This document shows positions 38,868-46,788 of a stretch of 64,000 nucleotides of DNA, piece by piece. The DNA comes from Hyaloraphidium curvatum SAG 235-1 (Eukaryota > Fungi > Monoblepharomycota). Each line of letters opens with the position of its first letter. Within the stretch, counting starts at the first letter, position 1. The notes under the pieces are model-generated. The model was given only the letters and a program-made list of their open reading frames with translations. It made no database searches and had not been told where the DNA came from. A program made the position numbers and the translations under genes. The DNA lies in assembly GCA_025558095.1 (NCBI GenBank), contig JAIVFI010000033.1, forward strand, positions 186,001 to 250,000. The letters are read 5' to 3'.

Positions 38868-39255
38868 GGAGGCGGAGCACGTTGGATGATGCTTCGAGAT
38901 TGCTACATGGGGCTTGTTTGTGGTCGATAGCGCACGGATCGGGGAAAGATCGGGCAATGGGCTAGTTGTCGCTGCTGCTGCAGAGCTTTCGAATGACACT
39001 GAATCGAACATAATGCATCGTCACCCGGCCCAGCTTCTTCAATTGTTCCAAACGCCTCCGTTTGACCGGTGGCCAGAAAGCATGTGTCCGGGACTGCGGA
39101 GGTTCGAGCTCAGCCACTCGGGATGCGGAACGAGTTCTTGCGGGCCCAAGCCGGAGGGATCTCGGGAACAAATACTGCCCTTCCTTCCGAGCGCACAGAA
39201 AAGCATCTTTCTCCACTCTACTCCGCTTCGTCCACCCACGCTCTACCCAGCAACA

Positions 39256-40585
39256 ATGGCCGAAGTCTCTATCGAGGCCCCGAAGCTCAACGAGCAGCCG
39301 CAGACCGTCACGGTCGTGCGCACCGAGCCGGTGCTCACCCCGGAGCAGGAGACGCTCCGGGCCAAGAAGGAGCGCGAGCTCTACTACTGGAACATCGCCA
39401 TGGTGCGTTGCCCGCCCACGGCCCCCCGCCGGATCTCCTCCGGAACGCTATAACGCATCCCCCCGCCCCGCCCCCACCAGACCGTCCTCCACGGTCTCCA
39501 GGCCGTCATCGCCCTCGGCATGGGCCTCGCCATCACCCGCCTCAAGAACTTCCGCACCCCGCTCATCACCACCTTCCCCGCCTGGACCCGCGGCTACCCC
39601 GAGCCCGCGCTGCAGGTCGTCGGCTCGCTGCCGTTCGTCCCGGTCACCTCGGGCTTTGCGTTCCTGTCGGCGATATTCCACGCCTTCACTCTGATCTGGT
39701 ACAAGCAGTACATTGCCGATCTGCGCAAGGGGATCGTGGGTCGGCCGCTTTCGCCGGGGTTGACGTCCGCTGACTGTCTACCCTCCCTCAGAACAAGTTC
39801 CGCTGGATCGAGTACGGTTTCTCGTCCTCGCTCATGATTGGCCTCATTGCCCAGCTGTTCGGTGTCTGTGGGTTTCGCATGTCGGCTCCGTGCCTGGCCG
39901 CGATCTGACCAGGGTCCGCCCATCGCAGACGACGTCATGACCCTTGTGACGATCATGAGCGTCAACGCGTGCATGAACTGTGGGTCGAATCGAATGTTCT
40001 GGTGACGTTGGTGTGGTTGCTGATGGTTTTGCTTCCTCCGCCGCCCCTCCGCGCACCGATCTCTCTGAAACCGCACATCACTCCCCTCCAACTCCCCTCA
40101 ACGCCTTCTAACGTCTCCGTATCGTTCCCTATCGTCATTTTGCAGACTTTGGGTATATGATGGAGTTGCAGAACCAAACAACCGACTACGTCGACTGGAC
40201 GGCCTTCTGGTTCGGCTGCTTCGCCGGCATCGTGCCCTGGGCGGTGATCGTCGCCCAGGCGGCCGGAACTCCCGGCATTTCTGCCGCGCCCGCCTTCGTC
40301 TGGGCCATCCTCGCCGTCTACTTCATATTCTTCAACACCTTCCCGATCAACATGATCCTGCAGTACCGCAGGCAGGGCCGCTTCGCCGACAACCTGTTCC
40401 CGGGATCGGGATACTACCTCGGCGAGAAGATCTACCAGATCCTTTCGCTGGTGGCCAAAGTGCGTTGTTGTAGATCGTGTTTGTTTGCACCGAGCTGATG
40501 CCGATCCCCAATCCAGTCGCTCCTGCTCTGGCTCGTCATTGGCGGTTCCAACCAGCCTTCGGCCGCCAACCCGCAGCCGCTGTAA
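39256..40585 (+). CDS. Heliorhodopsin (5 introns)
   Basis: Spliced product carries WN...LHGLQ (helix A His), LSAIFH (helix B His), NKFRWIEYGFSSSLM (helix C counterion Glu), FGYMME, FFNTFPINMILQY, GEKIYQILSLVAK (retinal Lys). Confidence 0.93.
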
Positions 40586-40678
40586 ACTAGTGGACTGCTC
40601 GATCAGGAGGGTGGATGTTGCTTTATGTAATGGCTCTGTCGAGGAACACGGTGCCTTTCCTCCAGCATTGACCATCGC

Positions 40679-41257
40679 TCACAAGATGCGGCTCGGGTAG
40701 AAGTTGACGACCCGCGCCGCCGCCGACTTCTTCCTGGGCCCCTTCTGGAAGATCTCCACGTAGTCTTTTCTCCCTTGCAAGATGTACCTCTTCTCCGGCA
40801 CCCCGTTTGCGTCCTTCTGCCAGTCCGTCTTGCGCTTCTTCTTCTTCCGCTTCTTCTTCGCTTCCTCCGGGCCCAGTGCGGCCTTCTGTTCTTCCGTGTC
40901 CATTTCCTCGCCGCTCTCGGCGTCCTCCCAGCCCTCATCGCCGTCCTCGTCGTACCATGCCGGCCCTTCCTCGTCCTCGCCGTCCGATCCGGCAATGTCC
41001 GCCGGCAGGGCCGACCGTTTTGGCTTTTCCAGCGCCTTCAGGACCTTCCCCGACTTGACCGAATGCAGCTTCGTCTCGGAAGCGGGTTGCTTCGCCTGCA
41101 GCCGCTTCGCGGGGGCCACTTCCGGCTCCAGGTCCGAACCGCCGAGTTCCGCGTCCGACGAGCCTCCAGGGGCGTCCGGGAGCGAATTGCGGGTAATCTT
41201 CTTAAAGTCCCGCTCTTTTCGCGACAGGCGCTTGTGGAATTTGGCGCTGCGGCCCAT
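40679..41257 (-). CDS. Basic/acidic small nuclear-type protein (MGRSAKF...LQGRKDYV)
   Basis: Single-exon ORF with Lys-rich NLS-like tracts and an acidic tract. Confidence 0.65.
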   Translation of the reverse strand: MGRSAKFHKRLSRKERDFKKITRNSLPDAPGGSSDAELGGSDLEPEVAPAKRLQAKQPASETKLHSVKSGKVLKALEKPKRSALPADIAGSDGEDEEGPAWYDEDGDEGWEDAESGEEMDTEEQKAALGPEEAKKKRKKKKRKTDWQKDANGVPEKRYILQGRKDYVEIFQKGPRKKSAAARVVNFYPSRIL

Positions 41258-44929: not shown

Positions 44930-46788
44930 TCAGTTCCGCACCGACATGGCCACCATCTCCTCGACAATCTCCCCGTCCAAAGTGTCCTCGTCCACCATCG
45001 AGTCCGGGTAGTTGAACCACCGCTTGGATCCGTGGCACCTCCCCGTCTTCTCCGCCTCGCGCTTGATCCGCGCCGCCAGCGCCTTGGTCAGCTGCCTCTC
45101 CTCGTACCTCCACGCCCAGTTGCCGTCCGCGACCCCGGGCACGTTCATCCGGCCCTCGCCGCCCAGGCCGAGGTAGTCCTGCAGCGGGACGATGACCCAG
45201 CGCGATTTCGCGTGGTACGCGTACTTGATAAAGTCCCAGTTGATCTCGTTGCCGTCCGCGTGCAGGTACTCGCGGATCAGCGCCTGCTGCTCCTTCTCTA
45301 TCGAGCGGAACCAGCCGACGAGGGTATTGTTGTCGTGGGTATCGGTGTAGCAGACCTGGTTCTCGGGCTTGCTCGACGGATCGTACTGGCGCGGGTCAAA
45401 GTCGGTGAACTCGAACTGCAGGATGCGCATGCCGGGGAAGTGGAACGCGTCCCGGAGCTCTTCCTGTGAGTCATCGAGCGATGCTTGTCAGCGATAAAGC
45501 CACTGGCACGGCACCCCGCCACCCACCACTTCGCGCGTGATGATCCCCAGGTCCTCCGCGATGATCGGCAGCACGCCAAACTCATTCAGCATCGACTCGA
45601 ACAGCTTGAATCCCGGCGCAGGCACCCATTTGCCGTTGATCGCCGTCTTTTCGCCCGCTGCGACCTCCCAGTAGGCCTCGAAGCCGCGGAAGTGGTCCAG
45701 CCGGACGATGTCGACGGCCTCGAGCGTCGCGCGGATCCGGGAGCGCCACCATTTGAAGTCGTCCTCGATGTGCTTTTCCCAGCGATAGAGGGGCTGGAGG
45801 GGAAGGGGGGTCAGATGGGTTGAAAATCCAAACCAGATCCGACCCACGTTGCCCCAGAGCTGTCCGGTGGCGCTAAAGTAGTCCGGCGGGACACCGGCAA
45901 CGACCGTTTGGTATCCATGTTCGTCAAGGAGGAACTGCGAGCAAGGAGATCATGGAGTGAGCAGGCACAGTGGACGCGATGACTGCTGCTCGCCACAAAC
46001 CAGGTCCCTGTGTGCCCACACGTCGCAGCTGTCACCGGACACGAAGATGGGTATGTCGCCGATGATCTTGACGCCGCGTGAGTTGGCGTAGCTGTGGAGC
46101 TTGGTCCATTGGTACCAGAAGAAGAACTGGCCGGCCTTGATCTGCGAGCACCGGCGACCATGGCTGTTCAGCCGAAGCTGGCGGGCCTCACACACGTTGT
46201 GCCCACCCTCTGAATCTGGACCGCGTGCCGGGCCTTGAACTCCGCCAGGGTCTTCTGGTCCCGGTCGCGGAACAGCTTCTCCCACTTCCACCAGTTCTCC
46301 CCGTCAAACACCTCCTTGAGCTCCTCGAACAGCGCGTAATCCTCGAGCCAGACCTCGTCGTTGACCTCGCAGAATGTCGCGAAGGAGCGGTACCAGATGT
46401 CCGTCTTTGGCCGCTGCACGAAGCGTTCCGCGACCTTGTCCAGCGCGGCCACCTTTGTCTTGTGCACGAGCTCAAAGTCGACCTTGATCGTGTTGGTTCT
46501 CGGCAGCGGCTTGAGCCAGTCCACGATGTCGGACGACACGAAGCCGTCGGCGACCAGGTCCTCGAAGCTGATCATGATCCGGTTCCCGGCGAACGACGAG
46601 TAGGCCGAGTAGGGCGAGTTGCCCGCGGCCGGCGGGCCCAGCGGCAGGATCTGCCACAGCGACTGGCCCGACTCGTACAGGAAGTCGACGAACTTGCGGG
46701 CGCCGGGGCCGAGGTCGCCCACGCCGTTGCCGCCCGGGAGCGACGTGGGGTGCAGCAGCACCCCGGCCAACCGCTCCTTCGAAGTCAT
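44930..46788 (-). CDS. malQ: 4-alpha-glucanotransferase / amylomaltase (GH77), 4 introns
   Basis: GVLLHPTSLPG, WQILPLGP, SPYSAYSSFAGN, IIGDIPIFV, GVPPDYFSATGQLWGN, RLDHFRGF, IIAEDLG, THDNNT, RMNVPG..GNWAWR. Confidence 0.95.

What the first reader, a model, noticed from the sequence alone, without database searches (positions are those of the whole stretch)
39256..40585. Intron-containing heliorhodopsin in a fungal-type genome
Seen: after removing 5 GT-AG introns the protein carries the heliorhodopsin hallmarks, namely His in helix A (LHGLQ), His in helix B (SAIFH), RWIEYGFSSSLM with the single counterion Glu, FFNTFPINM..QY, and the retinal-binding SLVAK. Known: heliorhodopsins have inverted topology and most characterised ones do not pump ions; eukaryotic members are poorly studied. 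Inference: host-type introns show a resident nuclear gene rather than contamination, so this is a candidate light sensor separate from the rhodopsin-guanylyl cyclase known in zoosporic fungi. No obvious transducer is fused to it.
Basis: partly seen in the sequence, partly recalled or inferred. Interest (0 to 1): 0.8.

Follow-up and report, generated by a model that had tools for sequence, protein, structure and literature searches.

The report
Heliorhodopsin gene of a chytrid fungus
This is a real six-exon nuclear gene of the early-diverging fungus Hyaloraphidium curvatum that encodes a textbook heliorhodopsin (a retinal-type light receptor), one of a small, so far undiscussed group of such genes in chytrid fungi whose function and source of retinal are unknown.

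Summary
Window 39256-40585 (+) holds six exons and five GT-AG introns coding for 303 aa. Each larger exon hits Pfam Heliorhodopsin (PF18761), in order and abutting at the joins.

A GenBank protein, 'membrane protein [Hyaloraphidium curvatum]' (P0177), is 100% identical to all six exon pieces and uses the same five introns. It differs only by an upstream ATG at 39082, which composition marks as probable 5'UTR.

As one chain it scores 249 bits (E 5e-74). It keeps the Schiff-base Lys (K281), the single counterion Glu (E141), both His and nearly all conserved core residues. The predicted fold (pLDDT 92) matches solved heliorhodopsins at TM 0.84-0.93.

The gene is single copy and lies in an 11-kb block collinear with a related fungal genome. 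It groups with Gonapodya (98/96). Three other chytrid genes share an exact intron position. It is therefore a resident, vertically inherited gene.

No transducer is fused. The genome lacks phytoene synthase, lycopene cyclase and CrtI but has five carotenoid-oxygenase loci, so retinal supply is open.

No RNA reads could be obtained. Function is inferred: a slow-photocycle sensor or regulator. Verdict: new member of a known kind, moderate interest.

The parts
39082..39255 (+). In-frame 58-codon extension used by the deposited GenBank model (ATG at 39082); probably 5'UTR.
   Evidence: P0177 residues 1-58 map here. GC by codon position is flat at 0.57/0.60/0.60, against GC3 of 0.83-0.96 in the exons. 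No homologue aligns to it.
39256..39402 (+). Exon 1 (codons 1-49): cytoplasmic N-terminus and the start of helix A, including N46. The ATG has an A at -3 and a G at +4.
   Evidence: The tail WNIAM joins TVLHGLQ to give the conserved helix-A N...H pattern.
39403..39480 (+). Intron 1, 78 nt, phase 0, GTGCGT..CAG.
39481..39735 (+). Exon 2 (codons 50-134): helix A with H53 (39490-39492), the AB beta-hairpin, and helix B with S112 and H116 (39679-39681).
   Evidence: PF18761 profile 9-90. Aligns to Cv06 (PDB 9vfc) at E 4e-10.
39736..39791 (+). Intron 2, 56 nt, phase 0, GTGGGT..CAG.
39792..39867 (+). Exon 3 (codons 135-159 plus 1 nt): helix C with N135, R138, W139, the counterion E141 (39810-39812), Y142, S145 and S146.
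   Evidence: PF18761 profile 91-115 at 34.8 bits. E141 aligns to E107 of 48C12.
39868..39928 (+). Intron 3, 61 nt, phase 1 (inside the Y160 codon).
39929..39979 (+). Exon 4 (51 nt): helix D with D161, N172 and N176.
   Evidence: It fills profile positions 116-133 exactly and is 100% identical to P0177 219-234.
39980..40145 (+). Intron 4, 166 nt, phase 1 (inside the Y177 codon).
40146..40459 (+). Exon 5 (314 nt): the end of helix D, helices E and F, and most of G. It holds E183, F197/C201/G204, F239/N240/P243, M246, Q249, Y266, E270, S277 and the Schiff-base Lys K281 (40457-40459).
   Evidence: PF18761 profile 134-230 at 117.7 bits. Matches 9vfc at E 6e-28, and K281 aligns to K241 of 48C12.
40460..40516 (+). 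Intron 5, 57 nt, phase 0, directly after the Lys codon.
40517..40585 (+). Exon 6: the end of helix G (SLLLWLV), the extracellular C-terminus (GGSNQP motif of the eukaryote-type clade), and the stop codon TAA.

Best explanation
Shown: window 39256-40585 is a single-copy, six-exon nuclear gene of Hyaloraphidium curvatum (Monoblepharidomycetes). It encodes a 303-aa heliorhodopsin of the eukaryote-type clade with no extra domain. It keeps the retinal-binding Lys in helix G (K281), the single counterion Glu in helix C (E141), the two conserved His (H53, H116) and the polar network around the Schiff base. The predicted fold is that of solved heliorhodopsins, and the K+R distribution fits N-terminus inside, C-terminus outside. 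Inferred: like the characterised heliorhodopsins 48C12, TaHeR and the closest solved relative Cv06 of Chromera velia, it binds all-trans retinal and absorbs green light. It then runs a seconds-long photocycle without net ion transport. The long-lived state would act on a partner protein that is encoded elsewhere and is unknown. That makes it a light sensor or regulator rather than a pump. Because the genome has no phytoene synthase, lycopene cyclase or CrtI-type desaturase but does have five carotenoid-cleavage-oxygenase loci, retinal is most likely cut from carotenoids taken up from outside (algae, detritus).
For: Gene model and splice sites. Exon-wise Pfam hits are collinear and abut at the joins. 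The deposited protein P0177 is 100% identical to all six pieces and maps on the same exons. The full chain scores PF18761 at 249 bits (E 5e-74, profile 2-240 of 242). PDB matches are Cv06 (9vfc) at E 6e-74, TaHeR at 6e-43 and 48C12 at 3e-40. The residue-level alignment gives N16, H23, P40, S76, H80, Y92, N101, R104, W105, E107, Y108, S111, S112, D127, N138, E149, Q216, Y226, E230, S237 and K241 all conserved. The AF2 model has pLDDT 92.1 and pTM 0.86, with seven helices plus the AB hairpin. The top ten Foldseek hits are all heliorhodopsins (TM 0.84-0.93), whereas type-1 rhodopsins reach only E about 3e-3. K+R counts are 14 on the predicted inside against 4 outside. The gene is single copy. An 11-kb block is collinear with a relative's contig (L018), with the gene in the same slot. 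The clade with Gonapodya has 98/96 support, and the eukaryote-type clade has 100/99. Lys and Glu are kept in all five named chytrid proteins and in L018. The V2HeR3 transport hallmarks are absent (Tyr at the E191 position, Phe at W195, Gln at E205). The retinal-path inventory comes and matches what PMC9616733 reports for Gonapodya.
Against: There is no experimental evidence of retinal binding, spectrum, photocycle or topology for any fungal heliorhodopsin. No partner is identifiable, because neighbouring genes in a eukaryote say little and the neighbours differ between chytrids. With no carotenoid synthesis genes, the holoprotein may form only when carotenoids are available. The heliorhodopsin family itself has several proposed functions and none is settled.
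Confidence: 0.62

Rival explanations
1. [quoted passage not shown]
For: Some heliorhodopsins do transport protons (PMC9448325). The counterion Glu and E270 (the E215/E230 position) are present.
Against: The hallmark gate Glu (E191 of V2HeR3) is Tyr (Y235) here. The neighbouring Trp is Phe (F239). The second proton-accepting Glu (E205) is Gln (Q249). These equivalences were obtained through the 48C12 equivalences given in the paper, so they are inferred. The closest solved relative, Cv06, is described as having a slow sensory-type photocycle.
Confidence: 0.08
2. In vivo it is mostly an apoprotein or has a light-independent role, because the fungus cannot supply retinal. Under this reading the conserved pocket is a legacy, or it binds another lipid or carotenoid.
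For: In a 31.9-Mb assembly there is no phytoene synthase (the only two PF00494 genes look like squalene synthase and NDUFAF6), no lycopene cyclase domain and no CrtI above cut-off. The same pattern is published for Gonapodya (PMC9616733).
Against: The Schiff-base Lys, the counterion and the whole pocket are conserved across Monoblepharidomycetes and Chytridiomycetes, which argues for continued selection on retinal binding. The genome keeps five carotenoid-oxygenase loci. It also keeps a type-1 opsin with a DTD motif and the Lys, which needs retinal too. All six residues of the proposed carotenoid-binding fenestration of Cv06 are identical here, which fits the use of outside carotenoids.
Confidence: 0.15
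3. It mainly serves light harvesting or photoprotection through an externally bound xanthophyll antenna, as proposed for heliorhodopsins in a 2025 preprint.
For: F197, C201, G204, F239, N240 and P243 are identical to the fenestration residues F212, C216, G219, F254, N255 and P258 of Cv06. The C-terminus-out topology exposes that site to the outside.
Against: The proposal is a preprint hypothesis. An antenna would not by itself say what the absorbed energy is used for. The organism is a heterotroph.
Confidence: 0.1
4. It is contamination, a recent horizontal transfer, or a mis-predicted or dead gene.
For: Heliorhodopsins are mostly prokaryotic. No RNA reads were available.
Against: The gene has five spliceosomal introns of the local type and host-like GC3 of 0.83-0.96. 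It lies on a contig given as 563,939 bp for P0177 and is flanked by eukaryotic genes for UBE2J-type E2 and ThiF proteins. The block is collinear in a related genome. Its nearest kin are other chytrid and alveolate genes, behind a long, fully supported stem that separates them from the bacterial rows. The frame is intact and every key residue is kept.
Confidence: 0.02

Closest known systems
Cv06, heliorhodopsin of Chromera velia (PDB 9VFC; preprint 10.1101/2025.11.27.691015)
   Same: It is the best solved match: E 6e-74 across residues 36-300, and about 62% identity over exon 5. Both share the eukaryote-type C-terminal motif, the longer FG loop and all six fenestration residues. Both have an N-terminal cytoplasmic extension.
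   Different: The host is a photosynthetic alveolate, not a fungus. The AB loop is shorter in the fungal protein. The fungal protein has never been expressed or measured.
48C12 and TaHeR, the founding bacterial and archaeal heliorhodopsins (PDB 6SU3, 6IS6)
   Same: Same fold (TM 0.84-0.93). Same Lys, single Glu counterion, two His and polar network.
   Different: Only 36-38% identical. Q213 is Met, I142 is Asn and S109 is Gly in the fungal protein. The fungal gene has introns and a 45-residue N-terminal tail. The tree puts it in a separate eukaryote-type clade (100/99).
V2HeR3, proton-transporting heliorhodopsin of Emiliania huxleyi virus 202 (PMC9448325)
   Same: Same family, with the counterion Glu and the E215-equivalent Glu conserved.
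   Different: The fungal protein lacks the E191 gate Glu (Tyr here), the Trp next to it (Phe here) and E205 (Gln here), so transport is not expected (inferred).
AbHeR, actinobacterial heliorhodopsin that binds and regulates glutamine synthetase (PMC9529153)
   Same: It is a possible model for how a domain-less heliorhodopsin can signal: by directly binding a soluble enzyme on the cytoplasmic side.
   Different: That partner was found through an operon. No such genomic clue exists here, and the partner is unknown.
Fungal type-1 opsins (NOP-1/CarO/LR type) and the rhodopsin-guanylyl cyclase CyclOp of zoosporic fungi (PMC9616733, PMC10622942)
   Same: They are retinal photoreceptors of fungi. H. 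curvatum also has one type-1 opsin locus with a DTD motif and the Lys.
   Different: They belong to a different family (PF01036 against PF18761), have the opposite topology and, in CyclOp, carry a fused cyclase. The gene here has no cyclase, and none lies on the opsin's contig. The 2022 survey of fungal photoreceptors does not mention heliorhodopsins at all.

Membership tests
Heliorhodopsin (Pfam PF18761) | Profile match above the curated cut-off over the whole domain | tested here: met
   249 bits against a cut-off of 26.7, E 5e-74, profile 2-240 of 242. Exon by exon the scores are 28, 34.8 and 117.7 bits, collinear.
Heliorhodopsin (Pfam PF18761) | Schiff-base lysine in helix G (K241 of 48C12) | tested here: met
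   K281, codon 40457-40459, aligns to K241.
Heliorhodopsin (Pfam PF18761) | Single carboxylate counterion in helix C (E107 of 48C12) within the RWxEY motif | tested here: met
   E141 within RWIEY aligns to E107. The column is invariant in a 68-sequence alignment.
Heliorhodopsin (Pfam PF18761) | Conserved His pair (H23, H80) and the Ser/Asn/Tyr polar network listed by Kovalev et al. 2020 (PMC7049168) | tested here: met
   H53, H116, N46, S112, Y126, N135, R138, W139, Y142, S145, E183, Q249, Y266, E270 and S277 are conserved. Only Q213 differs (Met), a variant that paper calls common.
Heliorhodopsin (Pfam PF18761) | Seven-helix fold with a long AB beta-hairpin, superposable on solved heliorhodopsins | tested here: met
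   AF2 pLDDT 92.1. Helices at 29-66, 101-131, 136-156, 162-185, 195-217, 226-250 and 265-291, with strands at 74-83 and 90-100. TM 0.84-0.93 to 6IS6, 6SU3, 9LJJ and 6UH3. This is a predicted model, not a solved structure.
Heliorhodopsin (Pfam PF18761) | Inverted topology (N-terminus cytoplasmic) | tested here: inconclusive
   The positive-inside count favours it, with K+R 14 inside against 4 outside, but this is only in silico. Epitope or protease mapping is needed.
Heliorhodopsin (Pfam PF18761) | Binds all-trans retinal, has a slow photocycle and shows no net ion transport | not testable with these tools
   Requires expression, spectroscopy and electrophysiology.
Rhodopsin-guanylyl cyclase (CyclOp/RGC) of zoosporic fungi | Type-1 rhodopsin domain fused to a guanylyl cyclase domain | tested here: not met
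   The protein carries PF18761 only. The twelve cyclase-domain (PF00211) matches in the genome lie on other contigs than this gene (C33) and than the type-1 opsin (C15).
Proton-transporting viral-type heliorhodopsins (V2HeR3 group) | Glu at the TM6 gate position (E191), with Trp four residues on | tested here: not met
   Y235 and F239 occupy those positions, by transfer through the 48C12 numbering. The mapping is inferred, because V2HeR3 itself was not aligned here.

The most novel reading that the evidence does not exclude
Heliorhodopsins are an old, vertically inherited photoreceptor class of chytrid fungi that was missed by surveys of fungal light sensing. They occur in at least Monoblepharidomycetes and Chytridiomycetes and share an intron at K136, phase 2. 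In lineages that have lost carotenoid synthesis, they would work with retinal, and perhaps an antenna xanthophyll, scavenged from algal prey or neighbours, so that light sensing is tied to the presence of phototrophs.
Probability: 0.3. Interest if true: 0.6.

Novelty: new member of a known kind. Interest (0 to 1): 0.42.

Why it matters
The physiological role of heliorhodopsins is still an open question, and almost all work is on prokaryotic proteins. The first eukaryotic structure (Chromera) appeared only as a 2025 preprint.

Fungal members are in the databases under names such as 'membrane protein' or 'hypothetical protein'. I found no paper in the held library that discusses them. The main survey of fungal photoreceptors (PMC9616733) does not list the family.

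A culturable, non-photosynthetic host with one heliorhodopsin, one type-1 opsin, no carotenoid synthesis and several carotenoid oxygenases is a clean system for two questions. The first is what a heliorhodopsin does in a heterotrophic eukaryote. The second is whether it depends on carotenoids from outside.

The result also corrects the deposited start codon. It further documents fast intron turnover in an otherwise conserved gene.

Tried and rejected
**RNA evidence.** An exact look-up of the 303-aa product among called genes found nothing.

**ESM Atlas.** The search with exon 5 gave only bacterial heliorhodopsin clusters at 0.88. It added nothing on eukaryotic kin.

**Joined model.** Searches were run exon by exon by reference. 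After I used the database protein P0177, which turned out to be identical. The relative's gene in L018 was mapped piece by piece, not joined.

**Literature.** Seven searches and several full-text look-ups found no paper linking heliorhodopsin to chytrid genes. One search was badly posed and wasted. Pushkarev 2018 is not held, so an earlier mention in subscription journals cannot be excluded.

**Fungal monophyly.** The quick tree grouped all named fungi at SH-aLRT 89. The careful tree left Quaeritorhiza and Zopfochytrium in a basal polytomy. The AU test does not reject one fungal clade: p 0.50, with the constrained tree 0.87 lnL better. I therefore claim only the monoblepharid clade as supported.

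**Conserved neighbour as transducer.** Neighbours differ between Hyaloraphidium, Gonapodya, Zopfochytrium and Quaeritorhiza, so no partner was proposed and no complex prediction was run.

**Upstream ATG.** The start at 39082 used by the deposited model was considered and rejected on composition.

Full report
**1. The observation**

Reading window 38900-41000 and testing splice sites by script gives one consistent model on the + strand.

- Exons: 39256-39402, 39481-39735, 39792-39867, 39929-39979, 40146-40459 and 40517-40585.
- Total coding length: 912 nt, or 303 codons plus TAA.
- Introns: 78, 56, 61, 166 and 57 nt.
- All introns begin GTGCGT or GTGGGT, end with AG, and carry CTGAC/CTAAC-like branch motifs.
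- Both split codons (joins 3/4 and 4/5) read TAC.

**2. Is it a heliorhodopsin?**

- Pfam PF18761 matches exon 2 (profile 9-90), exon 3 (91-115) and exon 5 (134-230, 117.7 bits, E 7e-34).
- The uncovered 18 profile positions equal exon 4 with its two split codons.
- The PDB sequence search puts the Chromera velia heliorhodopsin Cv06 (9VFC) first for each exon.
- That search aligns the Glu of RWIEY with E107 of 48C12, and the Lys of SLVAK with K241.

A full-library HMMER search with exon 5 was followed by a word search with an alignment of its best full-length hits plus my exon pieces as separate rows. This returned P0177, 'membrane protein [Hyaloraphidium curvatum]', 361 aa. Its residues 59-361 are 100% identical to my six pieces in order. 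The protein maps exactly onto the same exon chain of the window. So the window is from H. curvatum, and an independent deposited model uses the same five introns.

From that point I used P0177:59-361 as the reference for the whole chain.

- PF18761: 249 bits, E 5e-74, profile 2-240 of 242.
- PDB: Cv06 at E 6e-74, TaHeR at 6e-43, 48C12 at 3e-40.
- In 48C12 numbering, these residues are conserved: N16, H23, P40, S76, H80, Y92, N101, R104, W105, E107, Y108, S111, S112, D127, N138, E149, Q216, Y226, E230, S237 and K241.
- Three positions differ: Q213 is Met, which Kovalev et al. call a frequent variant; I142 is Asn; S109 is Gly.

An AlphaFold2 model built on a 68-sequence alignment has pLDDT 92.1 and pTM 0.86, with seven helices and the AB beta-hairpin. 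Its ten best Foldseek matches are all heliorhodopsins (TM 0.84-0.93, rmsd 2.2-2.9 A). Type-1 rhodopsins follow only at E about 3e-3. Lys plus Arg number 14 in the predicted cytoplasmic segments and 4 outside, which fits the inverted topology. No other domain is present.

**3. The start codon**

The deposited model starts at ATG 39082 and adds 58 residues that no homologue shares. GC by codon position there is flat (0.57/0.60/0.60). The six exons show GC3 of 0.83-0.96 and low GC2. The ATG at 39256 has A at -3 and G at +4.

**4. Resident gene or import?**

- The genome (31.9 Mb, 55 contigs) has one copy only.
- A 104-kb contig from another assembly (L018, 54% GC) carries the orthologue in the same slot. 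The gene order is E2 enzyme, unnamed gene, heliorhodopsin, minus-strand gene, ThiF, and further on GH77.
- tblastx shows the block to be collinear from window 35.5 kb to 46.8 kb.
- Pfam confirms the E2 (UQ_con) and ThiF genes beside the heliorhodopsin gene.

Named relatives are Gonapodya prolifera, Gonapodya sp. JEL0774, Quaeritorhiza haematococci and Zopfochytrium polystomum, at 57-66% identity. The next named kin are the alveolates Polarella, Alphamonas and Chromera.

In a careful ML tree:

| Grouping | Support (UFBoot/SH-aLRT) |
|---|---|
| Eukaryote-type clade, on a long stem | 100/99 |
| Hyaloraphidium + L018 + two unnamed proteins | 100/95 |
| That group + Gonapodya | 98/96 |
| The two chytridiomycete genes | unresolved at the base |

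An AU test does not reject one clade of all fungal rows (p 0.50).

**5. Introns**

Mapping the annotated proteins on their own DNA gives these intron positions in Hyaloraphidium numbering, written as residue/phase.

| Genome | Intron positions |
|---|---|
| Hyaloraphidium | 49/0, 134/0, 160/1, 177/1, 281/0 |
| Gonapodya | 49/2, 69/0, 136/2, 238/2, 275/1 |
| Zopfochytrium | 64/1, 136/2, 245/1 |
| Quaeritorhiza | 64/1, 136/2, 164/0, 208/0 |
| L018 | 72/1, 246/1 |

Intron 136/2 is shared exactly by Gonapodya and both chytridiomycetes, and 64/1 by the latter two. This points to an intron-bearing gene in their common ancestor. Hyaloraphidium and its syntenic relative share none of their introns, so turnover in this branch has been fast. 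Three pairs of positions lie only 1-5 nt apart.

**6. Chromophore supply**

- The genome has five loci of the carotenoid oxygenase family.
- It has only two PF00494 genes. By their conserved motifs, read from memory of those families, these are squalene synthase and an NDUFAF6-like protein.
- It has no lycopene cyclase domain and no CrtI-type desaturase above cut-off.
- Galindo et al. report the same pattern for Gonapodya (PMC9616733).
- There is also one type-1 opsin with a DTD motif and the Lys. It is not linked to any cyclase domain.

Two retinal proteins kept intact without carotenoid synthesis suggests that retinal is made from carotenoids taken up from outside. All six residues that form the proposed carotenoid-binding fenestration of Cv06 are identical here. 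That proposal is a preprint hypothesis.

**7. Mechanism**

The sensor or regulator reading rests on analogy with characterised heliorhodopsins and with Cv06, which has a slow photocycle. The transporter reading is weakened because the V2HeR3 hallmarks are Tyr, Phe and Gln here. That mapping is inferred through 48C12 numbering. No partner can be named.

**8. Limits**

- No experiment exists on any fungal member.
- Literature coverage is limited to the held library. There I found no paper on chytrid heliorhodopsins.
- My own joined model was never sent to a search tool. The identical database protein was used instead.

**9. Verdict**

The finding is correct and well read. It is a new, uncharacterised member of a known family in an unusual host. 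It belongs to a small chytrid group that deserves a look by people who study heliorhodopsin function. It is not a new kind of system.

Noticed in passing
window 39082-39255: The deposited GenBank model (P0177) starts 58 codons upstream of the conserved start. That stretch has flat GC across codon positions and no homologue, so the annotated N-terminus is probably 5'UTR.
   Followed up: yes
G000 C15:695381-695795 (locus L004/L005), minus strand: This is the only type-1 opsin locus of the genome. It has the helix-C motif ...YIDWALTTPLLLLDL (DTD type) and helix G ...LDVSAK with the Lys, and is split by introns. No cyclase domain lies on this contig.
   Followed up: partly
G000 C27:459421-460836, C6:517863-519767, C10:123849-125426, C41:280367-282185, C16:13110-14906: Five carotenoid-oxygenase (RPE65 family) loci sit in a genome that shows no phytoene synthase, lycopene cyclase or CrtI. 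The C27 copy is one uninterrupted frame. Which of the five, if any, makes retinal is unknown.
   Followed up: partly
window 39256-40585 against L018:9671-10798: These syntenic orthologues (74% identical over 174 columns) share none of their introns: five in Hyaloraphidium, two in the relative. Across chytrids, three pairs of intron positions lie only 1-5 nt apart (49/0 vs 49/2, 134/0 vs 136/2, 245/1 vs 246/1). This may reflect intron sliding or repeated gain at the same sites.
   Followed up: partly
L020:3269-5025 and L023:4083-5232: A histidine-phosphatase (His_Phos_2) gene lies next to the heliorhodopsin gene in both Zopfochytrium and Quaeritorhiza, in different relative orientations. It is not next to it in Hyaloraphidium or Gonapodya.
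   Followed up: no
window 44930-46788 and L018:17301-19248: The GH77 amylomaltase-like gene that other readers flagged as a transfer candidate is also present at the collinear place in the related genome. It is therefore not an assembly contaminant and predates the split of the two.
   Followed up: partly
L019:9962-10002: The annotated Gonapodya prolifera protein (P0206, 254 aa) is truncated at the N-terminus. An upstream exon ending ...SLWRWNLA plus a split Met codon continues the frame, so the deposited model starts inside helix A.
   Followed up: partly
L021, L022 (JGI metagenome contigs of 406 kb and 72 kb): An intron-free heliorhodopsin (P0187, 316 aa, 59% identical) sits in a very compact, apparently intron-poor eukaryotic genome found in several metagenomes, beside coatomer, MINDY and OST3 genes. 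The organism is unknown.
   Followed up: no
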